A stretch of 64,000 nucleotides of DNA, taken from IMG/VR virus record IMGVR_UViG_3300002143_000235, positions 249,709-313,708 of that record. The stretch is one strand, 5' to 3'. Below the pieces are notes generated by a model, which saw only the letters and a program-made list of their open reading frames with translations, ran no database searches and was not told the DNA's origin. A program made the translations under genes and the position numbers. Below are positions 40,697 through 61,598 of this stretch, piece by piece. Within the stretch, counting starts at the first letter, position 1. The number at the start of each line of letters is the position of its first letter.

Positions 40697-41497
40697 ATGA
40701 ATATTCATTTTACTGATAAAGAACTCTTTGAAAAACTGAAAGCGGCTTCGATCGTTCGTGTATTGGTTGGTTCTCATATGTATGGAACAAACAATGCTGA
40801 TTCAGATATTGATTATTTGTATATCTATGCTACTTCTGATAACGAGCTTAATTCGTTCATCCAGACGCATCATCAGCTTCAATATAAAGAAGAAGGTATC
40901 GATCATAATTTCGTATCATTACACACGTTCTTAAAGAACACAATCAATGGTGATTCACCAATGAATTTTGAAGTGATTCATTCTGGAAGCTTTCAAGGAA
41001 CTATGCTTGAGTTTTTGTATGACAATCGTAACAGATTCAATACGTACACTGTCTTAAAAGCATATTTAGGAATGGCTCGTCGTGATGCAAAATTTTATCA
41101 CAAAGAATCCACAACTAAAGGTAAAGCCAAAAAGCTTGGTCATGTACAAAGAGCTGATATTTATTGTCATACACTATTAAATCATAATTTTGATTTTACA
41201 ACATGTAACATTATTCTCAAAGATGTTATTAAAAATAATTTGACTTTAGTAGAAAACAATTTTGCGATTCGTTCAGCTGATGAAAATATTTCTCGATTGA
41301 GAAATTTAATGAATGATCACCTTAATGCTGGCACACTTGGTATGGCTCAGAAAATGGATATCATAGATTCAAAAATCTTGACATGTGCATTACAAGAGCT
41401 GATGATGAATAATACATATTTATCACATAAAGCAGTATTAGAAAACTTTGACATCGGAATGTTCTTGAATGCATTTGAAAATTGGGTTGAATACTAA
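40697..41497 (+). CDS. Pol-beta superfamily nucleotidyltransferase (RlaP-like)
   Basis: VGSHMYGTNNADSDIDY (GS...DxD). Confidence 0.75.
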   Translation: MNIHFTDKELFEKLKAASIVRVLVGSHMYGTNNADSDIDYLYIYATSDNELNSFIQTHHQLQYKEEGIDHNFVSLHTFLKNTINGDSPMNFEVIHSGSFQGTMLEFLYDNRNRFNTYTVLKAYLGMARRDAKFYHKESTTKGKAKKLGHVQRADIYCHTLLNHNFDFTTCNIILKDVIKNNLTLVENNFAIRSADENISRLRNLMNDHLNAGTLGMAQKMDIIDSKILTCALQELMMNNTYLSHKAVLENFDIGMFLNAFENWVEY

Positions 41498-42280: not shown

Positions 42281-42354
42281 GGTCCTGTAGCTCAGTTGGT
42301 TAGAGCATTCGACTCATAATCGACAGGTCGTGGGTTCAAGTCCCTCCGGGACCA
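42281..42354 (+). tRNA. tRNA with CAT anticodon (Ile2 or elongator Met)
   Basis: Canonical cloverleaf GGTCCTG/CGGGACC, loop CTCATAA, T-loop TTCAAGT. Confidence 0.9.
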
Positions 42355-42660
42355 CAAAACTATTAAAATGTCTAAAATAGAACAAAAATATAGATTCAAA
42401 CCAACCGAAATGAATTTACGTTGGAAAGAAGGTCTTGCATTATATAATTTCAAAAATAATACAAATCATACATATGATCAGTTTTTGAATGAGCTTGTTG
42501 ATGAAGATTTCAATTCAGCGTTTGATAAATGTGTTGATGAAATTCATGCTTTTGATAATCTTTTAATAGAAGATTATCAAAAAGCAATGAAATTGAAAGA
42601 TTCTAAATATGCATGTCTTGATTCATATTTAGAACTTGTTGAAGATAAATACAATTAATT

Positions 42661-44505: not shown

Positions 44506-44778
44506 TGATCAGTGTAGGAATCGTAGTGGTTAGGCTTAGCCGTTGAAAGAGGTCAGTGACACGATGCAGGACTAATAGGGACTCAAGGTTTAAGTAACGT
44601 TGGTGCAAACCAGATACACCGAAGAGAAAACAGAATACCTGTGCTACACAATAAGGTCAGTTGACAGAACCGCATACTAGTTTGGTTTGGGTCAGGATGC
44701 AACTTTTAAAGGGAACACCGATTCAGTAATGATGATCACCCGATTAAGAAGCCGTCGGTTCGAGTCCGGCACTGATCA
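44506..44778 (+). ncRNA. About 270-nt RNA with tRNA-like acceptor stem and T-arm (tmRNA-like architecture, identity unresolved)
   Basis: TGATCAGT/ACTGATCA ends; GTCGG-TTCGAGT-CCGGC T-arm; GC-richer non-coding interior. Confidence 0.6.
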
Positions 44779-44791
44779 CTAATTTTTTACA

Positions 44792-45268
44792 ATGACAAAA
44801 GAAATTATTGAAGAACAAATAACAGTTATTGACGAGCAGCTTGAAAAATATAAAAATGCCTTAAAAGAGATAGATAATCTTAAAAAATAGAAAACACAAC
44901 TAAAAAATAAACTTGAGTTATTAAAACCAATACAAATTGAGGATTCACTTATTGTATCATTAACTGATGTTGAAGATAATAAAATTGATGCATTAATTAC
45001 AACTGCTATTAATGGTAAAATTAGAGATTGGGTTAATTATTATTTTGATGCTGATGATTTAGATGCTGATGATGTAATATATACAACACATATGCTTATT
45101 GGATCTAGATTATTTGTAGTTGATATTAATTATGAAACTGAATGGCTTTCTGAATGGTATTCAGTTGATAGTTCTACTGGTAAGTTTATAAGTAAAAAAG
45201 AAATTTTTAATTTCACGGTTAACTGGAATAATGATGATATGTTTAATGCTACTTATCCACGACAGTAA
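44792..45268 (+). pseudogene. 158-codon frame interrupted by one in-frame TAG (44888-44890)
   Basis: MTKEII...LKK*KTQLKNK...YPRQ; the frame stays open for 125 codons after the TAG. Confidence 0.65.
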
Positions 45269-45391
45269 TTAAATTTAGATATTATTTATTGTGTATTAAG
45301 CAGTTTAAAAATAAATCAAAAATATTTTCATAAAATAACGTTTGATTTAAAAATAATGTGTATATTTGTATCACAATCAAACGAGATTGTA

Positions 45392-45466
45392 GATAAGGTA
45401 GTTTAAGATAAAACATCCATAGAAGCTTTAACGCAGGATTTAAAGGTGCAAGTCCTTTTCTTATTA
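45392..45466 (+). ncRNA. tRNA-like RNA with expanded anticodon loop
   Basis: GATAAGG/TCTTATT acceptor, D-arm, ATCC-17 nt-GGAT, AAAGG-TGCAAGT-CCTTT. Confidence 0.55.
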
Positions 45467-45572
45467 CATATAAGTTCTTTGAAACTTGACTAGAGACGGC
45501 AGAGTAGAGTAATTATGTTGGTAATAAGACTTCATAATGAAATGAATTGTCGTTTCTCAGTTCTAAAAAAAT

Positions 45573-45747
45573 GCGTAACTAAAAGACAGGTAGTTAGTAA
45601 ACTAGATAAAAAATTTCGAAGCGATCGATAGAAGCACAATATATTCTAGTATGAAAGCAAACAATGGTTGTGTATCCTGCGCCGAAACATTGATGGAGAA
45701 TTCTAAGTCAATGTGGAATTAAATGGGTTCGAGTCCCTAGTTACGCT
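45573..45747 (+). ncRNA. About 175-nt RNA with tRNA-like ends
   Basis: GCGTAAC/GTTACGC stem plus GGG-TTCGAGT-CCC T-arm. Confidence 0.55.
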
Positions 45748-45842
45748 CAATTTTGCCGCCAAAAGGAGAACCGTGAGTCTGAGGTGTAAAAACTGTACGA
45801 CGAGCATACGTCATACCTTGCGGCGCCAAAACATTAAAAATA

Positions 45843-45924
45843 TTCTTGTGGTGTAATTAGCACGGTCCACTAAGTGGGAGAAGTTTGGGTAGGCGATTAA
45901 CGCTATTTAAATCCCAACAAGAGC
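45843..45924 (+). ncRNA. Aberrant tRNA-like RNA
   Basis: TTCTTGT/ACAAGAG acceptor, GTG/CAC D-arm, CCAC-TAA-GTGG arm, hairpin inserted in the T-loop. Confidence 0.45.
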
Positions 45925-46181
45925 GGTATTCCAGGTTATCAATCTCCTTATGATTGGTTAGTTATGTCGGCACTAAAAGTTCGATCCTTGTTTAAAGTTT
46001 TTTATTGGTTAACAAAAACTACTTTATCTGTTCAATATGCGTGAACAGACGGTTTTATCTTAAACCGTATGCATAGATCGTTTAGTATATTAGCGTCAAA
46101 ATATACAGACATACTAAGATATGTAACATCGTTGTCACTATACGCACTATGGAAATGTGTTTAAAAATGATGACGATAAAT

Positions 46182-46267
46182 GCGGAGGTGGCGAAATTGA
46201 TTAACGTTTACGGACAAGTTTTCGTAGATGAAAAAATTCAATGTTGGTTTGAGTCCAACCCTCTGCA
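46182..46267 (+). tRNA. Degenerate Leu-like tRNA (non-canonical anticodon loop)
   Basis: GCGGAGG/CCTCTGC-A, TGGCGAAATTG D-region, GTTGG-TTTGAGT-CCAAC. Confidence 0.55.
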
Positions 46268-46274
46268 CTAAAAT

Positions 46275-46345
46275 ACAGGGTTAGTTTAAAGTTAAAACGC
46301 GGATCGTTGGGATCCGAGATGTTGGTTCAATTCCAATACGCTGTA
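46275..46345 (+). tRNA. Atypical tRNA (Pro/Gln-like anticodon arm)
   Basis: ACAGGGT/ACGCTGT-A, CGGATC-GTTGG-GATCCG, TTGG-TTCAATT-CCAA. Confidence 0.55.
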
Positions 46346-47547
46346 CAAATATTATTGATTGAACACCAATAAACGCAATGGTGAGACGGTAGTAATACCG
46401 TCTCATACAGGACCGATAAAGAAATTTATTGGTCCTTTTGCATTTTATATCAGTATTTTATCTATATTTGTACAGTTCAATTAATAATTACAAATAATCA
46501 TGGAAGTAAATTTCAAACCTGAAAAATTTATCAATGCAGATCCACCAGAATTAACTGATGGAATGATTGATTGGTTTTATTCAAATCTGTGGTCTTGGCA
46601 ACGTAATCGCTATGAATTTTGCGATATAAAGAAAATTGATACAATTAATGTACGATTAAACACATCGTACAATGGTTGGACTATTATATATTTTTACATC
46701 TCAATCAATGGTGGTCCTGAATTTTGTGCTGAATTTGATAAAACATACTACAGTGATTTTCACGATCGTTGGAAGAAAAACTATGGACGAGCATTCAACC
46801 GCGATAAAGAACTTTGTACGCTTATTAATGTCAATGGTGTTGACATAGGTGATAATGGGCCAGTAGAACGTGAAGAAAGACGCATTGAACTTGCGGAATT
46901 AAAACGAAATGCAAAACAGCATGTTAAGCGATTACGTTCAACCTGGGAAAGTTACGTGCGTCTAAAAGCATATTTTAATATTGATTAATAATGTCTATTA
47001 TTTCTATTACATACGACGAACCAAATACTGACACGTACCAAAGTGTTAAAGCATCTTTAAGTTTTAAGGATGATAAACGTGAATTTACTTCAGGTAATTT
47101 TATTAAAGATTGGTATGATGCTATTAAGTTTCTTATACATGAATCAGAAGATGGAGAACCGTGGTCACAATCCTCAAGTGTTGATCATTTTATTATGGAT
47201 GGTGCACAATTTAAAAGTGCTTATTTATGTAAAGACAACTTGATTGGTGGATGGCATCTTGTTTATGATTACGATGAAGTATCTTATGGATCAGGTATTG
47301 AGTTTTTTGTTGAAAAAAATACTCGTCCAACGTGGGATGAATTTAAAAATGAAATGGAAAAAATTAATGTATGAATGAATACAGAAAAATAGATCTTGAC
47401 AAACTTATTTCACAAGCAGGAAAAGTTAAAGTTACAATTATTAACGATGAGACAGGAGCAATTTCAGAAACTACATTTACTGATTATGAAACAGCAGTAC
47501 ATGAGATTGAAATTCTTGAAAATGAAAATACAATTTACTTTTAAAAG

Positions 47548-48258
47548 ATGAATATTCCAATCACTAAAGAGCAACATGAACGATTTGCTGACGTTCATAA
47601 ATATGATCTTATTTTTGGATCACGATTATTCGGTGTACATAGAGAAGATTCAGATTTTGATATAATTTCACTCTATAAATACGAAGATGTTTTCGGACCA
47701 AAAATATATTATCATAGTCTTCCAAATATTCATTCATTTAAATATGAGGATACAGAAAAAAATGAGGATCGTATTTACATGACTTACGAGCAGTTTTGGA
47801 AAGCTTTCTATGATGGTGATGGTACAATGTATGCAGATATTATCTTGTTTGGTGATTATTTTGCTCTGGATGCACTCAAACTATGTAGAGCATATAAAGT
47901 TATTAAAGGTTATTGTGGTACAGCCAAACGCGATCTTTTAGCTGCTAAACGTTGCACACCAGAAGAACGAAAAAAGATTTTTCATCGTTCCGCAAAAAAT
48001 CTTTATATTACTGGTTGTCTTATAGATAATGAATATCCAGATATTGAACACATCAGAAATGTTATATTTAAACAAGCAGAAGGTGTCACAACATCAATAG
48101 ATACACTACTCAAAGTAGAAACATATCTGAGGGAGGAAGCCAATAAGCTCTTCAATTCACATGAGATTGAAAACTACCACATTCCGACAACTGACGATGA
48201 GCTGCTGAACATCATGCTCAGTGGTAACAACCTCAAAGAATACATCTTCAAGAAATAG
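47548..48258 (+). CDS. Pol-beta superfamily nucleotidyltransferase (paralog of 40697-41497)
   Basis: FGSRLFGVHREDSDFDI; shared YKVIKGYCGTAKRD vs YTVLKAYLGMARRD. Confidence 0.7.
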   Translation: MNIPITKEQHERFADVHKYDLIFGSRLFGVHREDSDFDIISLYKYEDVFGPKIYYHSLPNIHSFKYEDTEKNEDRIYMTYEQFWKAFYDGDGTMYADIILFGDYFALDALKLCRAYKVIKGYCGTAKRDLLAAKRCTPEERKKIFHRSAKNLYITGCLIDNEYPDIEHIRNVIFKQAEGVTTSIDTLLKVETYLREEANKLFNSHEIENYHIPTTDDELLNIMLSGNNLKEYIFKK

Positions 48259-50371: not shown

Positions 50372-52012
50372 TTAATCTATATATTGAACAGCATCTAATA
50401 CCCATTTTGGAAAATAATGACTATTCCAACGAAGAAGATCTGCAAAACAACCATCAAGAACATATGTTGATGCATGATCATCCATACTTCTAATTGATCG
50501 TCCATATGATTGAACTACATCCCTTACTGTAGCTAAAGGATAATATTCTTTCATTGTATCCATACGCTTTTTGATCTTTTTAGATCCAAGGTTTGGATAC
50601 GGTATTTTTAATATTGTTTGATGTCTGGATAAATCATCGGATAAATCTACACCAACCATCATAGATGGTGATACAAGTACTGTTGGTTCATCAATTGTCT
50701 GATGTTGTTGAAGTATTTCTGATCTGTTTGATGAATCGTGTGCAAGCATTCTGTTTGAATCAAATGCTTCGCTTACCCAACGTTGAAGTTCGTAATTTGC
50801 AGTATGAATAATGCCTTTCTCTTTTGCATGTCGCTTCATGATTTTCTTAAGAACCTCAAGCTGCTTGGGCCAGACAATTTCTTTTGTTTTAAATGTTTGT
50901 TTACCAACATTTTTAAAAAAATAAATTGGTCTATTTGCTACAGGAAAAGGTGAATCAATACAAATATAATCAGCCATACTAGCATCAATACCATTCATTT
51001 TTGAAAATGCAATCTTGTCTAAAATTGTACCAGACATAAAAATAATATAATCGTATCGACTCCAAACATATTCATCAAGATATGGATATGCCCAAACTGG
51101 TTGTGCTGTCATCTCTACATATTCATCACTAACACCACCACCTTTACTAAATTTTTTAATACGTTCAGCTTCTAAGATCCAATTGTCTTTTGTTTTTTCA
51201 AATTGTTCAGAAAGTGAATCCCATTTCATCATATTGTTTCCAAGTGATTGAATTGTATTTAACGCTTCCATACTACCTTCTTCGGCTTCACGTGATAAAC
51301 GATTCATTACTGATTTAGCAATATTCAAAAAAGGCTCTTTAACAATTTCAATGAATTCTTCAATTAAAAGATCTTCAGGATAGTCACCAAATAATGCCAT
51401 TGCTCGGTGTGTGTCATCATCAGTAAAGCCATTTCTTTTGAGTAATGGTTTACTTATTTTTGTTGTAATAAAGTCTGCGAATACATTTTCAAAGTCGTGC
51501 GCCTCATCAATAATAAGAACACGTGATTGTCTTTTCCAAGCCATAGGCATGAAGACTTTGTATGTTAAAAATAAATGAAAATTAGTTAATGCAACATCAC
51601 CATTTTCAAACTTATACTTTGCTTCTTTATACGGACAATTTTCACATTGAACACCCTGTATTTTACACCAATCCATTCCAGATCCACAGTCTGTATTGAA
51701 AGTTTCACAAGAATAAGATCCTTTTCCCCATAATGAATTCATGAAGTCAAAATCGTTTGTATATTGTTCTTGAAGAATTTTAGAATTTGTTAAAATATCA
51801 AAGTTTGCTGAAATATCATACTCTTTCTTAAACCAATCCATAAACATTACAGAATAGTACGACTTACCAATACCAACAGGTGCATCAATAAGAATAAATT
51901 TTTTATTATTCATAATTGCTTGTTTGGTAAAATTAAGCAATTCTGTTTGCTGTGGTCTTGGGTTTTTACTGAGCTTGATGCGCTCTATATTGTAGATGGA
52001 AACGTCTTTCAT
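50372..52012 (-). CDS. DinG/XPD-family helicase
   Basis: PRPQQ, APVGIGKS, Cys cluster, IIDEAH, SGT, GVD, KIPYP, QSYGRSIRSMDD; start MKDVS at 52012 preferred. Confidence 0.88.
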   Translation of the reverse strand: MKDVSIYNIERIKLSKNPRPQQTELLNFTKQAIMNNKKFILIDAPVGIGKSYYSVMFMDWFKKEYDISANFDILTNSKILQEQYTNDFDFMNSLWGKGSYSCETFNTDCGSGMDWCKIQGVQCENCPYKEAKYKFENGDVALTNFHLFLTYKVFMPMAWKRQSRVLIIDEAHDFENVFADFITTKISKPLLKRNGFTDDDTHRAMALFGDYPEDLLIEEFIEIVKEPFLNIAKSVMNRLSREAEEGSMEALNTIQSLGNNMMKWDSLSEQFEKTKDNWILEAERIKKFSKGGGVSDEYVEMTAQPVWAYPYLDEYVWSRYDYIIFMSGTILDKIAFSKMNGIDASMADYICIDSPFPVANRPIYFFKNVGKQTFKTKEIVWPKQLEVLKKIMKRHAKEKGIIHTANYELQRWVSEAFDSNRMLAHDSSNRSEILQQHQTIDEPTVLVSPSMMVGVDLSDDLSRHQTILKIPYPNLGSKKIKKRMDTMKEYYPLATVRDVVQSYGRSIRSMDDHASTYVLDGCFADLLRWNSHYFPKWVLDAVQYID

Positions 52013-53107
52013 ACAATCTTTTATCTGAAAAAGATTAAAGTGTTTAAAAAATAGAGAAAAGAAAAGAATTAAAAAATGTGCCACATATGTATTATATGCA
52101 TACACATGAGAAATATTAAATTATTTACGACCTACTATACTTGTTTTTTTAACTTTAAAAGGTGGTTGACCATAATATGGACTTGATTCCTCCATTTCAA
52201 CTGTTACACTATCTTTTCCAGAATTCGTAACTATTACTGATACAACGTCTTCTGTAATTGGATGATGAACAAATACTATATCACCTGCAGAAAGTTTCAT
52301 TCCTTCATATAAAGCTAAGAGTCTATCTTTACCATAAATGTGTATCATATGCTTCTATATATCAAAAAAACAATGTATCATTGCAACATTCAAAAGATTA
52401 TATGAAAGGCGTTATACTAGGAGTTAATCTCCATGATTACAAGACAGAATTAAAAACTGGTGAATTAGTTTGTATAGACAACGAGTTTTACAAATTAGAA
52501 AAAATTGATCCTACATTTGGAGATGTTAAATATTTTGTAAATTCAAAAATTAACAACGAACCAATGAATTTTGAAAGAAGTGAAATATCGAAAGCTACAA
52601 TACAGATTTTTGATTCATTGATTTATTATGGTGAAGGCAAACAAGTACGTATTGGATATTTATCGCCATCAGATATTCGAAATATGCGTGCTAAAACAGT
52701 TATTGAAATGGATCTTCCATCTTCAGAAATTGATAATATACACGATGTAGATCTTATTGGACATGAATTTGATGGTAATGTATTAATCAAACAAGAACAA
52801 GATTACGAATTTATTACACATCCTGTTGCTTATTTTAAAGTTTTAACATGATAATAGTAACAATTAGTGCGTGTATATTAATAATCGTTGGAATTATTAT
52901 AATGATGTCATATCTTCACCGTAAGGAAATTAAATTCTTTGAGGATGCAGAACGTATGGAAATTCTTTTAAAGACGAATAACATCACCTATGACGCTGCT
53001 ATTGAAGATTTGAACAAACTTAGGAAAAATGTTAAGAACCGCGACGAACGTCACAGGTACTATCAGATTGTGAAACTCATTGAACTCAAATTCAATACTG
53101 ACATTGT

Positions 53108-53962
53108 ATGAAAATTAGAACTGATATTAATGCTAACTATAAAGCGGTATTCTTCAACTATAAAACAGTTAGGATGCGTATCGATAATTCCAAACCAATT
53201 ACTGCTCCAAAACATCCAGAAATTGAAGATGTTGCAATCAATTCAAAATGTCTTGCTGCTTGTTCATACTGTTACACATCAGCTCTCAAAACAGGTGTAA
53301 ATTTTTCAGATATTGTAGGAAAGGCAACAGCTGTCTGGGGATCATTGAAACCAGAAGACAGACCGTTCCAGATTGCAATTGGTGGTGCAGGTGAATCAAC
53401 AATGCATCCAGATTGGGTTGATTTTGTAAAACATGTAAGTGAGTTGGGTATTGTACCGAATTATACAACAAATGGTATGCACCTCACACCTGAAGTTCTT
53501 GAAGCTACAGAAAAGTATTGTGGTGGTGTTGCATTAAGTTATCATCCACATATCAAAAAAGTATTCACTGAAGCAATGGATAAATTGAAGCAGATTGATA
53601 CTAAATTGAATACACATGTAATTATTGGTGATAAACAATCTTTGCTTGACTTACAAAACATTTTTGATACGTATAAAGACGATATGGATTACTTTGTAGT
53701 TCTTCCATATCAAGCTGCAGGTCGAGCTAAAGAAATTGATACAACAGAAACTTGGAAAGAATTGTTTCTCTGGATTGAAACTTTATCTGACGAACGCAAG
53801 AATCAATTTGCATTTGGTGCGCTTTTTTACGAATACCTGTTAATAAACAAACCAGGATTTGAAATTAATATCTATGAGCCTGAAATCTATTCTGGTTACA
53901 GACTTATGGATAATACATTTAACACATTAAGAAAATCGAGTTATGACCTCACAGAAAAATAA
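53108..53962 (+). CDS. Radical SAM protein
   Basis: CLAACSYC (CxxxCxxC), IGGAGE, NYTTNG. Confidence 0.88.
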   Translation: MKIRTDINANYKAVFFNYKTVRMRIDNSKPITAPKHPEIEDVAINSKCLAACSYCYTSALKTGVNFSDIVGKATAVWGSLKPEDRPFQIAIGGAGESTMHPDWVDFVKHVSELGIVPNYTTNGMHLTPEVLEATEKYCGGVALSYHPHIKKVFTEAMDKLKQIDTKLNTHVIIGDKQSLLDLQNIFDTYKDDMDYFVVLPYQAAGRAKEIDTTETWKELFLWIETLSDERKNQFAFGALFYEYLLINKPGFEINIYEPEIYSGYRLMDNTFNTLRKSSYDLTEK

Positions 53963-60756: not shown

Positions 60757-61598
60757 ATTGGTACAAAAAAATAAAAAATAACATACAGCAATGTTTAATA
60801 ACGGTTATGTCCGAAAGGACCTGTGTGTGAGCTGTCATCTGAAAAGACACGTATTGTAAATGGGATTGAGTAGATAACTCATTAAACGCTTGGAACCGTC
60901 CTGAATTACTTTACGTTATAAGAACTTAGTAAGTAGCATATCATGCAGTGATTGAATTAGCAAGCAGACAGATTGACTTATCATTAGTCTGAAATTCTTG
61001 CATGTTATTTGAACAAAAGATTTCTTACAGCAAATATTCGTTTAAGCATCCTTATAGCTCGTGGTCGTAGGTTCGATTCCTGCTCTCGCAACAAATTAAA
61101 AAATAAATTGCGAGATAGCTCAGTGGTAGAGCACGTAATAACAAAAACAGAAATCTGATAAGATTAGTTACAGCAAACAAAACAAACATCAAACTTTTAC
61201 TTTGAACACGTTTAAAAACTCTAATCTGATAAGAAGTGTAACAGCAAAATCCTTTATGGTAAAAAATTTGACTCAAACTCAAAAATAGATGGTTCAAATC
61301 CGTCAGCTCGCCGGAGCATAAACGTCAACACTTCTGTACAAAGTCACTTACAGCAATTTTATAACACTGATTTTCTAACTCAATATGTTTAAAAATGTGA
61401 CTTGAAAAAAGAGCACTTACAGCAAACTTAAAACTTTACTTTTTTTGGATAAAAGACGGGCAGGTTCGATTCCTGCGGTGCGCGAACACTCTCGGTGCGG
61501 ATAAACTACACTGTGCTCTGATAAGGATACTTTCAGCAAATTTAAAAAAATTTCATTTGAAGAAAAAACAACACGTATCCTGAATTATTTGTACCAAT
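60757..61598 (+). ncRNA. Array of seven stem-closed RNA units with invariant CAGCAA and tRNA-derived interiors (candidate Y-RNA-like array)
   Basis: Units 60776-61010, 61018-61156, 61161-61227, 61232-61335, 61341-61403, 61410-61519 and 61524-61581, each with a different 7-9 bp terminal stem; outer helix 60757-60767/61588-61598. Confidence 0.8.

What the first reader, a model, noticed from the sequence alone, without database searches (positions are those of the whole stretch)
45361..46440. Cluster of tRNA-ended RNAs with intact acceptor/T-arms but remodelled anticodon arms
Seen: about 1.1 kb without ORFs between a TATATTTG promoter and a terminator near 46410-46440. It holds 45392-45466 (17-nt anticodon loop), 45573-45747 (long insert between tRNA-like ends), 45755-45828 (GCCGC/GCGGC-G-CCA), 45843-45924 (3-nt loop, hairpin in T-loop), 46182-46267 (Leu-like, odd loop) and 46275-46345 (6-bp stem, 5-nt loop), plus several plain hairpins. 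Stems still pair, which argues against simple decay. Inference: tRNA scaffolds used as RNase P/Z processing tags, decoys or nuclease-resistant variants.
Basis: partly seen in the sequence, partly recalled or inferred. Interest (0 to 1): 0.7.

Follow-up and report, generated by a model that had tools for sequence, protein, structure and literature searches.

The report
Phage operon of anticodon-remodelled tRNA mimics
An uncultivated giant phage carries a 1.1-kb gene-free operon of tRNA-shaped RNAs whose acceptor and T arms are intact but whose anticodon arms cannot decode, together with a member of a conserved phage RNA family that is not in Rfam; it looks like part of the phage's tRNA-centred toolkit rather than random decay, but no RNA data exist to prove it.

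Summary
The observation largely holds. Window 45361-46446 is an ORF-poor unit with a Bacteroidota-type promoter box (TATATTTG) and a strong terminator. It lies in a jumbo-phage record of at least 313 kb.

- **tRNA homologues:** three elements pass Rfam's tRNA threshold: A 45392-45466, F 46182-46267 and G 46275-46346. All three have non-decoding anticodon arms.
- **Weaker cases:** D is cloverleaf-compatible. B has only a T arm and a 9-bp closing stem. Neither has model support.
- **Element C is not a tRNA relic.** It belongs to a conserved ~65-nt RNA motif found in at least 18 distinct sequences from uncultivated phage contigs, often sitting flush between tRNAs. The motif is absent from Rfam 15.
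- **The remodelling is genome-wide.** Ten tRNA-like genes in four islands have 1 mismatch in 120 acceptor and T pairs, yet all but one (a D-arm oddity) have abnormal anticodon arms. The loop design C32-R33-NNN-R37-G38 recurs three times here and twice in other phages.
- **Limits:** no informative orthologues and no RNA-seq were found, so function is inferred.

Best reading: processed, non-decoding tRNA mimics or nuclease-insensitive tRNA variants. Main rival: young pseudogenes or intron scars.

The parts
45361..45370 (+). Promoter-like box TATATTTGTA (the Bacteroidota -7 type, TAnnTTTG), 22 nt upstream of element A
   Evidence: 13 exact copies in the window, several just upstream of ORFs. The same box precedes RNA genes in L054 and L033. 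That TAnnTTTG is the Bacteroidota -7 consensus is my own knowledge.
45392..45466 (+). Element A: tRNA homologue with 7-bp acceptor, D and T stems, but a 4-bp anticodon stem with a 17-nt loop. The T loop is UGCAAGU and the D loop has no GG.
   Evidence: RF00005 34.9 bits with an 18-nt insert in the anticodon arm. Arm fold. Acceptor and T stems 12 of 12 paired.
45488..45562 (+). Long imperfect hairpin between A and B
   Evidence: Fold of 45467-45572: -21.6 kcal/mol, z = -1.9
45573..45747 (+). Element B: 175-nt RNA closed by a 9-bp stem next to a T-arm-like GGG-UUCGAGU-CCC. The interior is of unknown nature.
   Evidence: MFE -41.5 kcal/mol, z = -2.7. No Rfam hit. Does not align with the insert-bearing tRNA-Ile of relatives. 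The strain SNP at 45613 falls in an unpaired A run.
45754..45828 (+). Element C: member of a conserved phage RNA motif. Order: P1 closing stem, GAGAACC, P2, UGMGG, P3 hairpin, AUACGUCAUAC. Here P1 is extended by GCCGC/GCGGC and followed by GCCA.
   Evidence: Model R1 gives 61.5 bits, E 2e-12. 18 distinct family sequences, with covariation in P1 and P2. No Rfam family matches.
45843..45924 (+). Element D: cloverleaf-compatible RNA. It has a 7-bp acceptor, a 4-bp D stem, a 5-bp anticodon stem with triloop UAA, and a 5-bp T stem with a 23-nt loop that holds a small hairpin.
   Evidence: The centroid fold gives four arms. Arm energy -4.0 kcal/mol. No Rfam support.
45925..46181 (+). Region E: an anticodon-arm-like hairpin (45938-45958), a T-arm-like piece (about 45972-45992), and hairpins at 46028-46048, 46049-46068 and 46128-46177
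   Evidence: Folds (46011-46100 has z = -2.1). The strain SNP at 46152 falls in a predicted loop.
46182..46267 (+). Element F: tRNA homologue with G3-U70 and A73, a long-variable-arm shape, and its anticodon arm replaced by a 10-bp hairpin with a 6-nt loop. The T loop is UUUGAGU.
   Evidence: RF00005 34.0 bits. Fold z = -3.05. Arm energy -8.2 kcal/mol. 12 of 12 acceptor and T pairs.
46275..46346 (+). Element G: tRNA-Gln(UUG)-like gene with anticodon loop CGUUGGG (G33, and C32 can pair with G38). It has one G-G mismatch in the acceptor stem.
   Evidence: ARAGORN Gln-UUG and RF00005 47.6 bits. The arm folds as a 6-bp stem with a 5-nt loop, -8.3 against -3.4 kcal/mol for the canonical form.
46381..46446 (+). 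Two strong hairpins (46381-46406 and 46409-46436) followed by a T run: the operon's terminator
   Evidence: Terminator scan. Fold -37.2 kcal/mol, z = -7.9.

Best explanation
The region is a self-contained non-coding RNA operon in the tRNA-island system of a giant phage that probably infects a Bacteroidota host.

**Production (inferred)**
- It is transcribed from a host-type promoter at 45361 and ends at the hairpins at 46381-46446.
- The precursor of about 1 kb is probably cut at the tRNA-like acceptor and T-arm modules by RNase P and RNase Z.
- The pieces would then receive CCA, for which the phage has its own enzyme.

**Products**
- tRNA-derived RNAs that keep the tRNA body but carry a closed, enlarged or replaced anticodon arm (A, F, G, probably D). 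These cannot decode normally.
- A conserved RNA that is not a tRNA (C).
- Further structured RNAs (B and the hairpins).

**Function (inferred)**
- These are tRNA mimics in the conflict over tRNAs.
- The class that keeps its anticodon (G, and Pro and Lys genes elsewhere) would be nuclease-insensitive tRNAs or uncleavable decoys for anticodon nucleases.
- The class without an anticodon loop would be competitors or scaffolds for proteins that bind the tRNA body.

What is shown: the anatomy, the family membership of C, and the genome-wide pattern. What is inferred: transcription, processing and function.
For: - **Operon boundaries:** promoter box, terminator and lack of ORFs.
- **tRNA homology:** A, F and G pass Rfam's tRNA threshold.
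- **Anticodon-specific change:** 1 mismatch in 120 acceptor and T pairs in ten odd tRNA-like genes, against 7 in 276 in canonical ones. Nine of the ten have an abnormal anticodon arm, and several of those arms are more stable than any canonical arm, at -7.3 to -8.3 kcal/mol.
- **Recurrent loop design:** C32-R33-NNN-R37-G38 occurs in Gln (the window), Pro at 76358 and Lys at 77464. It also occurs in L009 and L109, while 123 of 126 other phage tRNAs have U33.
- **Related phages:** L009 and L023 have a syntenic ORF-free RNA cluster of about 1.1 kb that contains a tRNA-like gene with a closed anticodon loop. L054, a 483-kb phage, has a promoter-driven tRNA-like gene with a tetraloop-closed arm near the C motif.
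- **Element C:** a conserved family sitting in tRNA slots.
- **Phage genes:** it encodes a CCA-adding-type enzyme, RlaP and HAD_SAK_2 proteins, and a YrlA-like tRNA mimic at 61060-61135.
- **Composition:** GC reaches 40-43% over 45600-46000, against a genome mean of 32%.
- **Strain SNPs:** both fall in predicted unpaired positions.
- **Published parallel:** the idea that phage tRNAs carry anticodon-loop changes to escape host tRNases is published (PMC10264068).
Against: - No RNA evidence at all: no RNA run was listed.
- A, B, D, F and G have no detectable homologue in 1.1 Mb of related and other phage loci. Covariation could not be tested, and the content of the cluster differs between relatives.
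- D-loop and T-loop tertiary nucleotides are degenerate in A, D and F: no GG in the D loop, and T loops UGCAAGU and UUUGAGU.
- Region E looks like tRNA debris.
- Finding tRNA-like genes by their acceptor and T arms biases towards intact bodies.
- The host and its nucleases are unknown.
- No RtcB or Rnl2-type ligase was found in the record.
Confidence: 0.45

Rival explanations
1. A decaying tRNA island. A, D, F, G and the fragments in E are young tRNA pseudogenes whose anticodon arms were damaged first. One route would be imprecise loss of anticodon-loop insertions like those seen in tRNA-Ile of related phages. Only C would be functional.
For: - Relatives carry 125-165-nt insertions exactly in the anticodon loop of tRNA-Ile. 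This gives a mutational route aimed at that arm.
- Region E holds tRNA fragments.
- Loop nucleotides needed for the L-shape are degenerate in A, D and F.
- A, B, D, F and G have no homologues, and cluster content turns over quickly between relatives.
- Ascertainment bias favours elements with intact acceptor and T arms.
Against: - Insertion scars do not explain point-substituted 7-nt loops of one recurring design (C32-R33-NNN-R37-G38) in five genes from three phage lineages.
- Anticodon stems are lengthened and stabilised, not eroded.
- There is 1 mismatch in 120 body pairs.
- The only tRNA-Pro found by ARAGORN in the record has this loop and sits in a tight array of canonical tRNAs.
- The unit keeps its own promoter and terminator in a genome whose ORFs of 100 aa or more cover 86% of it.
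Confidence: 0.28
2. Pure processing punctuation. The tRNA-like modules serve only as RNase P and RNase Z cut sites that release the real products (the C motif, B's interior, the hairpin RNAs). Their anticodon arms drift because only the acceptor and T half is needed.
For: - In other phages the C motif lies flush between two tRNAs. In L048 it sits between tRNA-Ala and tRNA-Asp.
- Linkers are short: 7 nt between B and C, and 7 nt between F and G.
- The forms of the anticodon arm vary widely, as expected under relaxed constraint.
- tRNA-like processing signals are known elsewhere, for example t-elements in plant mitochondria (PMC1920247).
Against: - Anticodon-remodelled genes also sit inside islands made only of tRNAs (76-78 kb), where nothing needs releasing.
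- Canonical tRNAs do the same job in other phages.
- Drift does not predict a recurring loop design or hyperstable arms.
- In L054 the C motif needs no tRNA neighbour. It has its own promoter and terminator.
Confidence: 0.17
3. They are working decoding tRNAs with unusual anticodon arms, or need splicing or editing to become so. Examples would be G as tRNA-Gln, or A and B as intron-bearing tRNAs. One might even read through the in-frame TAG at 44888.
For: - ARAGORN calls G tRNA-Gln(UUG).
- Relatives have insert-bearing tRNA-Ile genes with a perfectly conserved CUGAUA anticodon-loop start.
- An ORF just upstream carries an in-frame TAG.
Against: - U33 is replaced in G, and in D and F if their arms are opened to a 7-nt loop.
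- Loops of 3, 5, 6 or 17 nt cannot present an anticodon in the standard way.
- No CUA anticodon was found in any element.
- The genome reads well in code 11, and TAG recoding adds almost nothing.
- A canonical tRNA-Gln(UUG) exists elsewhere in the genome.
- B does not align with the insert-bearing tRNA-Ile.
Confidence: 0.06

Closest known systems
Phage tRNAs with anticodon-loop substitutions proposed to escape host anticodon nucleases (van den Berg et al. 2023, eLife, PMC10264068)
   Same: Phage-encoded tRNAs with a normal body and altered anticodon-loop nucleotides next to the anticodon. G, Pro at 76358 and Lys at 77464 keep their anticodons but change positions 33, 37 and 38. From my own knowledge, Lys(UUU) and Gln(UUG) are classic anticodon-nuclease targets.
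   Different: Here the changes remove the near-universal U33 and allow a C32-G38 pair that closes the loop to 5 nt. That goes well beyond the single substitutions described. Other elements (A, D, F) have no usable anticodon loop at all. Host tRNAs are unknown, so no phage-host comparison was possible.
YrlA, the bacterial and phage Y-RNA-like tRNA mimic (Rfam RF02553)
   Same: An RNA that copies the acceptor, T and D part of a tRNA while the anticodon arm is replaced by another helix. This same window carries a YrlA-like element at 61060-61135.
   Different: YrlA is circularly permuted (T arm, closed acceptor stem, D arm) and is tied to Ro60/Rsr. A, D, F and G have the normal gene order with free acceptor ends. 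There is no YrlA hit in 45250-46520 and no TROVE gene in the record.
Stable RNAs C and D (species 1 and 2) of the phage T4 tRNA gene cluster (my own knowledge, not tested here)
   Same: Small stable RNAs of unknown function, co-transcribed with phage tRNAs and matured by the tRNA-processing machinery.
   Different: No sequence comparison was made. A representative family member (not the window's own copy) has no match in 50,697 GenBank phage records.
GOLLD and ROOL RNAs of phage tRNA islands (RF02032; PMC12286853)
   Same: Structured non-coding RNAs of unknown function embedded in, or next to, phage tRNA islands. A GOLLD RNA lies on the same contig as a C-motif copy in L055.
   Different: They are 400-800 nt or more and form multimeric cages. 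The C motif is about 65 nt. No GOLLD or ROOL match was found in the window.
tRNA-like processing signals: plant mitochondrial t-elements (PMC1920247), mascRNA, and the tmRNA tRNA-like domain
   Same: Acceptor and T-arm mimics that recruit RNase P or RNase Z, or alanyl-tRNA synthetase through G3-U70 (F has G3-U70 and A73).
   Different: No tag reading frame was found and ARAGORN makes no tmRNA call. Processing here is inferred, not shown.

Membership tests
tRNA (Rfam RF00005) | Covariance-model score at or above the gathering score (29 bits) | tested here: met
   A 34.9, F 34.0 and G 47.6 bits. Not met for B, C and D, which have no hit at E < 10.
tRNA (functional, decoding) | 5-bp anticodon stem with a 7-nt loop and U33 | tested here: not met
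   A has a 17-nt loop. D has a 3-nt loop. F has a 10-bp stem with a 6-nt loop. G has the loop CGUUGGG with G33 and a possible C32-G38 pair.
tRNA (functional, decoding) | Elbow nucleotides: G18 G19 in the D loop and a UUCRANY T loop | tested here: inconclusive
   G has T loop UUCAAUU but only one G in its D loop. A has UGCAAGU and F has UUUGAGU, both without GG in the D loop.
Conserved phage RNA motif defined here (model R1) | P1 closing stem, GAGAACC, P2 (GUKAGU with ACKAGC), UGCGG, P3 hairpin, AUACGUCAUAC | tested here: met
   C scores 61.5 bits, although it was one of the 15 training rows. GAGAACC and ACGUCAUAC are intact, UGCGG reads UGAGG, and P3 is divergent. Independent members score 62-71 bits: L058, L054 and L087.
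Conserved phage RNA motif defined here (model R1) | Structure supported by covariation | tested here: met
   86% of cells are paired, against 34-50% when partners are slid. 8 pairs show double changes. 0 of 500 shuffles reach the covariation score.
YrlA / Y RNA-like (RF02553) | Permuted tRNA-like domain, usually next to Ro60/Rsr | tested here: not met
   No hit in 45250-46520. No TROVE gene in the record. A sub-threshold YrlA match (35.6 bits) lies elsewhere, at 61060-61135.
tmRNA | tRNA-Ala-like domain with G3-U70 plus a tag reading frame | tested here: not met
   ARAGORN's tmRNA mode finds nothing. B has G3-C70. F has G3-U70 but is only 86 nt and has no tag frame.
tRNA gene with a group I intron | Match to the group I model; U before the 5' splice site and G as the last intron base | tested here: not met
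   No Intron_gpI hit in the region or in the insert-bearing tRNA-Ile of L009. B does not align with those genes. In L033 the insert ends in A under the junction that fits L009 and L023.
Nuclease-evading phage tRNAs (PMC10264068) | Anticodon-loop differences from the host tRNA at a known nuclease cleavage site | not testable with these tools
   The host and its tRNAs and nucleases are unknown. Only the phage side is seen: U33 replaced in 4 of 26 tRNAs, against 3 of 126 in other phages.

The most novel reading that the evidence does not exclude
Giant phages of Bacteroidota-type hosts deploy a battery of non-decoding tRNA mimics. These keep the tRNA body, but the anticodon is locked in a closed hairpin (C32-G38, purine 33) or replaced altogether. 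They would act as uncleavable baits or inhibitors of tRNA-targeting immune nucleases. The co-transcribed ~65-nt 'GAGAACC...ACGUCAUAC' RNA would be a new functional RNA class of phage tRNA islands, either a protein-binding RNA or a small ribozyme.
Probability: 0.22. Interest if true: 0.8.

Novelty: new variant of a known kind. Interest (0 to 1): 0.6.

Why it matters
- **Phage tRNAs and defence.** Phage tRNA islands are increasingly seen as counter-defence against host tRNA nucleases. This genome would extend that idea from tRNAs with single changed bases to a whole set of tRNA-shaped RNAs built not to decode.
- **A concrete signature.** The pattern (body intact, U33 lost, C32-G38 closure or arm replacement) can be searched for in other phages.
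- **An RNA family not in Rfam.** The work defines a conserved small RNA family of phage tRNA islands. It has strongly conserved loops and covarying stems, which makes it a clear candidate for biochemical study.
- **A warning for annotation.** tRNA counts in giant phages may include non-decoding mimics.

Tried and rejected
**Searches for relatives**
- Flanking proteins (162 aa and 209 aa) have no relatives in IMG/VR, and the 162-aa one has none among 5.8 billion proteins.
- The only close relative (L027) is 99.8% identical over the cluster and gives two SNPs.
- Helicase relatives at 66-76% identity either end before the cluster or hold different RNAs.
- DNA searches of the region found nothing useful in GenBank phages, five related records or 1.1 Mb of fetched loci, apart from element C.

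**Pattern scans**
- B's 3' end: no match.
- The tRNA-Ile insert: one chance match.
- Window-type C in JGI metagenomes: none, in two scans.
- The C motif in 185,579 species genomes: 8 chance matches, none confirmed by the model.

**RNA evidence**
- No RNA run was listed. The DNA contigs show only a 151-nt identical piece.

**Ideas dropped**
- Genome-wide stop-codon recoding.
- B as tmRNA.
- B as orthologue of the insert-bearing tRNA-Ile.
- The cluster as GOLLD or ROOL.
- Paralogy of the elements with the phage's own tRNAs.
- A 27-aa ORF with a Shine-Dalgarno-like sequence inside C. Neighbouring genes here show no such sequence upstream of their start codons, and C is a conserved RNA.
- C as a hairpin-ribozyme variant. 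There is a superficial likeness (AGAA and GUC), but no Rfam hit and the loop geometry does not fit.
- ARAGORN's low-threshold 'intron' tRNAs, which are not credible.
Full report
**Setting**

The window is the last 64 kb of a 313,708-bp IMG/VR virus record estimated to be 80% complete. The record comes from a JGI metagenome. A trace of the same sequence occurs in drinking-water metagenomes.

- The genome is 32% G+C.
- It reads normally in code 11: ORFs of 100 aa or more cover 86% of it.
- It carries about 29 tRNA-model matches in several islands.
- The motif TATATTTGTA occurs 13 times exactly in the window, several copies lying just upstream of ORFs. It fits the Bacteroidota -7 promoter consensus TAnnTTTG (my own knowledge).
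- Neighbouring genes such as those at 44792 and 46500 show no Shine-Dalgarno sequence upstream of their start codons.

Together these point to a Bacteroidota host. That is an inference.

**Checking the observation**

Between 45269 and 46499 the longest ORF is 47 aa. The promoter box lies at 45361-45370. Two strong hairpins and a T run lie at 46381-46446; the scan reports 46409-46436, and the fold has z = -7.9.

Rfam's tRNA model matches 45392-45466 (A, 34.9 bits), 46182-46267 (F, 34.0 bits) and 46275-46345 (G, 47.6 bits), all above the gathering score of 29. ARAGORN accepts only G, as tRNA-Gln(UUG).

| Element | Anticodon arm | Energy |
|---|---|---|
| A | 4-bp stem, 17-nt loop | -1.3 kcal/mol |
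| G | loop CGUUGGG (G33; C32 can pair with G38), folds as 6 bp with a 5-nt loop | -8.3 kcal/mol |
| F | 10-bp hairpin, 6-nt loop | -8.2 kcal/mol |
| D | 5-bp stem, triloop UAA | -4.0 kcal/mol |

The weaker cases:
- D folds as a four-armed cloverleaf in the centroid structure, but it has no model support.
- B has a 9-bp closing stem and a T-arm-like GGG-UUCGAGU-CCC (z = -2.7), and nothing else tRNA-like.
- 45925-46181 holds an anticodon-arm-like hairpin, a T-arm-like piece and plain hairpins.

**Element C is something else**

A weak match between C and a related phage contig (L009) led to a pattern scan of IMG/VR. That scan recovered a family of RNAs about 65 nt long.

- **Architecture.** A closing stem P1, invariant GAGAACC, then a helix P2 in which tandem G-A/A-G alternates with U-A/A-U. 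After that come UGCGG, a small hairpin P3, and invariant AUACGUCAUAC.
- **Covariation.** On 18 distinct sequences, 86% of cells pair, against 34-50% when partners are slid. Eight pairs show changes on both sides. No shuffle reaches the covariation score.
- **Model R1.** It scores the window's C at 61.5 bits, although C was a training row. It finds members that were not used for training in a 123-kb contig (71 bits) and in two giant-phage contigs of 483 and 312 kb (62 bits).
- **Position.** The motif often sits flush in a 'tRNA slot'. In L048 it lies between tRNA-Ala and tRNA-Asp, and in L097 after tRNA-Ile. In L054 it is a stand-alone gene with its own TAnnTTTG promoter, and P1 plus a U run serves as terminator.
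- **Absent elsewhere.** It is not in Rfam 15. No match to the pattern derived from it was confirmed in 185,579 species genomes. A representative member has no match in GenBank phages.
- **Copy number.** The phage has one copy.

**The remodelling is genome-wide and specific to one arm**

Other islands of the same genome hold tRNA-like genes with intact bodies and abnormal anticodon arms:

| Gene (genome coordinate) | Anticodon arm |
|---|---|
| Pro(UGG), 76358 | loop CGUGGAG |
| Lys(UUU), 77464 | loop CAUUUGG on a broken stem |
| Gly-like, 77884 | 10-bp arm closed by a tetraloop |
| 77213 | 3-bp mini arm |
| 52899 | 4-bp stem, 6-nt loop |
| 152060 | abnormal |

A tenth odd gene, at 52983, has a normal Ala (UGC) anticodon loop but an aberrant D arm.

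- Over the ten odd genes, acceptor and T stems show 1 mismatch in 120 pairs. The 23 canonical tRNAs show 7 in 276.
- U33 is replaced in 4 of 26 ARAGORN tRNAs here, against 3 of 126 distinct tRNAs from the other phage loci fetched.
- C32 with G38 occurs only together with a purine at position 33: three cases here, plus L009 and L109.
- The closed arms of G, F and Pro (-7.3 to -8.3 kcal/mol) are more stable than the arm of any canonical tRNA of the genome, which range from -0.5 to -5.7 kcal/mol.

Caveat: tRNA-like genes are found through their acceptor and T arms. Elements with decayed bodies would be missed.

**Relatives**

A sister-strain contig (L027) is about 99.8% identical over the cluster.
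- It shows two SNPs (45613 and 46152), both in predicted unpaired positions.
- It also has a roughly 575-nt insertion at 46480.

This gives no covariation information.

Phages whose helicase is 66-75% identical keep synteny up to about 48.3 kb of the window.
- L009 and L023 have an ORF-free RNA cluster of about 1.1 kb at the equivalent place, with a terminator.
- Each of the two clusters contains a tRNA-like gene with a closed anticodon loop, and L009's also holds a C motif.
- L009, L023 and L033 all carry a tRNA-Ile(GAU) with a 125-165-nt insertion in the anticodon loop. Its ends form a covarying 4-bp helix, and it matches no Rfam family.
- Apart from C, none of the window's elements has a detectable homologue in these or other fetched loci.

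No RNA sequencing run was listed.

**Context**

- The phage encodes a PolyA_pol/CCA-adding-type protein beside its largest tRNA island.
- It has two HAD_SAK_2 proteins, one of them inside that island.
- It has an RlaP nucleotidyltransferase about 4 kb upstream of the cluster.
- No RtcB, Rnl2-type ligase or TROVE protein was found.
- The window also holds a YrlA-like permuted tRNA mimic at 61060-61135.
- None of the tRNA-like genes encodes CCA. Only C ends in GCCA.

**Interpretation**

*Shown:*
- An autonomous, structured, ORF-free unit.
- Three bona fide tRNA homologues with non-decoding anticodon arms.
- One member of a conserved RNA family that is not a tRNA.
- A genome-wide remodelling pattern specific to the anticodon arm.

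*Inferred:*
- Transcription as one precursor.
- Cutting by RNase P and RNase Z at the tRNA-like modules.
- CCA addition.
- A role as tRNA mimics.

I favour tRNA mimics or nuclease-insensitive variants (0.45) for three reasons. The lesions are confined to one arm. They stabilise rather than erode it. They recur as one loop design in independent genes and phages. This fits the published proposal that phage tRNAs carry anticodon-loop changes to escape host tRNases (PMC10264068).

The rivals:
- **Young pseudogenes (0.28).** These could be scars of anticodon-loop insertions like those in the relatives' tRNA-Ile. Support comes from the lack of homologues, the degenerate elbow nucleotides and the debris in region E.
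- **Pure processing punctuation (0.17).** This fits the C motif's tRNA-slot position. It does not explain remodelled genes inside islands made only of tRNAs.
- **Normal decoding (0.06).** This is unlikely.

**Novelty**

tRNA mimics, variant phage tRNAs and non-coding RNAs in tRNA islands are all known kinds: YrlA, the T4 stable RNAs, GOLLD and ROOL (PMC12286853). What goes beyond the families compared here:
- The scale and form of the anticodon-arm remodelling.
- The C32-R33-NNN-R37-G38 design.
- The C-motif family.

I rate it a new variant of a known kind, with interest 0.6.

Noticed in passing
window 61019-61582 (+): A second RNA cluster. It has a YrlA-like permuted tRNA mimic at 61060-61135 (RF02553, 35.6 bits, E 6.6e-6, below the gathering score of 69). 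It also has five tandem stem-closed units carrying YUWCAGCAAW, which hit the Dictyostelium Class I RNA model (best 37.3 bits), and three CTGATAAG-N-WCAGCAAA repeats. The cluster is conserved in L009 (4239-4700) and L024. The homologous piece in L069 lies just upstream of a Ro60/TROVE-vWA gene, yet no TROVE gene is found in this phage record.
   Followed up: partly
window 44507-44777 (+): An ORF-free, 43% G+C stretch just upstream of the finding. It ends in a perfect T arm (GTCGG-TTCGAGT-CCGGC) and an acceptor strand with three possible 5' partners, 123, 227 and 271 nt upstream. No Rfam match, and the fold is not better than shuffles.
   Followed up: partly
window 44792-45268 (+), TAG at 44888-44890: A 32-codon ORF continues in frame through a single TAG into a 125-codon open frame (first ATG at codon 67 of it, the 58-aa ORF 45092-45268). 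The rest of the genome shows no sign of TAG recoding, and no CUA-anticodon tRNA was seen.
   Followed up: partly
own genome (G000:C1) 51700-53400, 75800-78000, 150200-153700: The other tRNA islands hold more oddities. Pro(UGG) has loop CGUGGAG and Lys(UUU) has loop CAUUUGG. A Gly-like gene has a 10-bp anticodon hairpin, and a 66-nt tRNA has a 3-bp anticodon arm. Gln, His and Met tRNAs are 85-88 nt long with long variable arms.
   Followed up: partly
L009 16200-16399 (-), L023 7000-7216 (-), L033 6090-6310 (-): Related phages carry tRNA-Ile(GAU) with a 125-165-nt insertion in the anticodon loop. It has a covarying 4-bp helix between its ends and a shared AGUCGACG...AAGGU core. It matches no Rfam family. 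The group I splice-site rule (U before, G last) fits two of the three.
   Followed up: partly
L054 7960-8320 (+) (483-kb IMG/VR phage): Three repeated promoter units (GGTAGAA...TATATTTGTAAGA). One drives a stand-alone C-motif RNA, where P1 plus a U run acts as terminator. Another drives a tRNA-like gene with a tetraloop-closed anticodon arm and a long variable arm. A long structured region follows.
   Followed up: no
L103, L055, L066, L109, L069: about 240 nt downstream of the C motif: A long RNA-like sequence, strongly conserved between these contigs, follows the C motif (it starts AAGACCCCACGATTAAC). It has no Rfam match at gathering. L055 also carries a GOLLD RNA 6 kb away. Arrays of tRNA-like units with identical acceptor and T arms but variable interiors occur in L068, L069 and L097.
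   Followed up: no
L010 2040-4812, L011 3457-8072: The DinG-like helicase gene that is intact in the window (50372-52105) is split into two or three pieces in related contigs. This suggests inteins or introns. A DUF723 gene sits beside the helicase in L022 and L031.
   Followed up: no
window 46480 and 42355-42436, compared with L027: The sister strain has a roughly 575-nt insertion with small ORFs just after the operon's terminator. It also has about 1.3 kb of extra sequence and a highly diverged stretch downstream of tRNA-Met (42281-42355).
   Followed up: no
window 40697-41497 (+) and 47548-48258 (+): An RlaP-family RNA-repair nucleotidyltransferase and a weakly Pol-beta-like nucleotidyltransferase flank the RNA cluster region. 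A CCA-adding-type gene lies at genome 155592, and HAD_SAK_2 genes at 153029 and 216085.
   Followed up: partly
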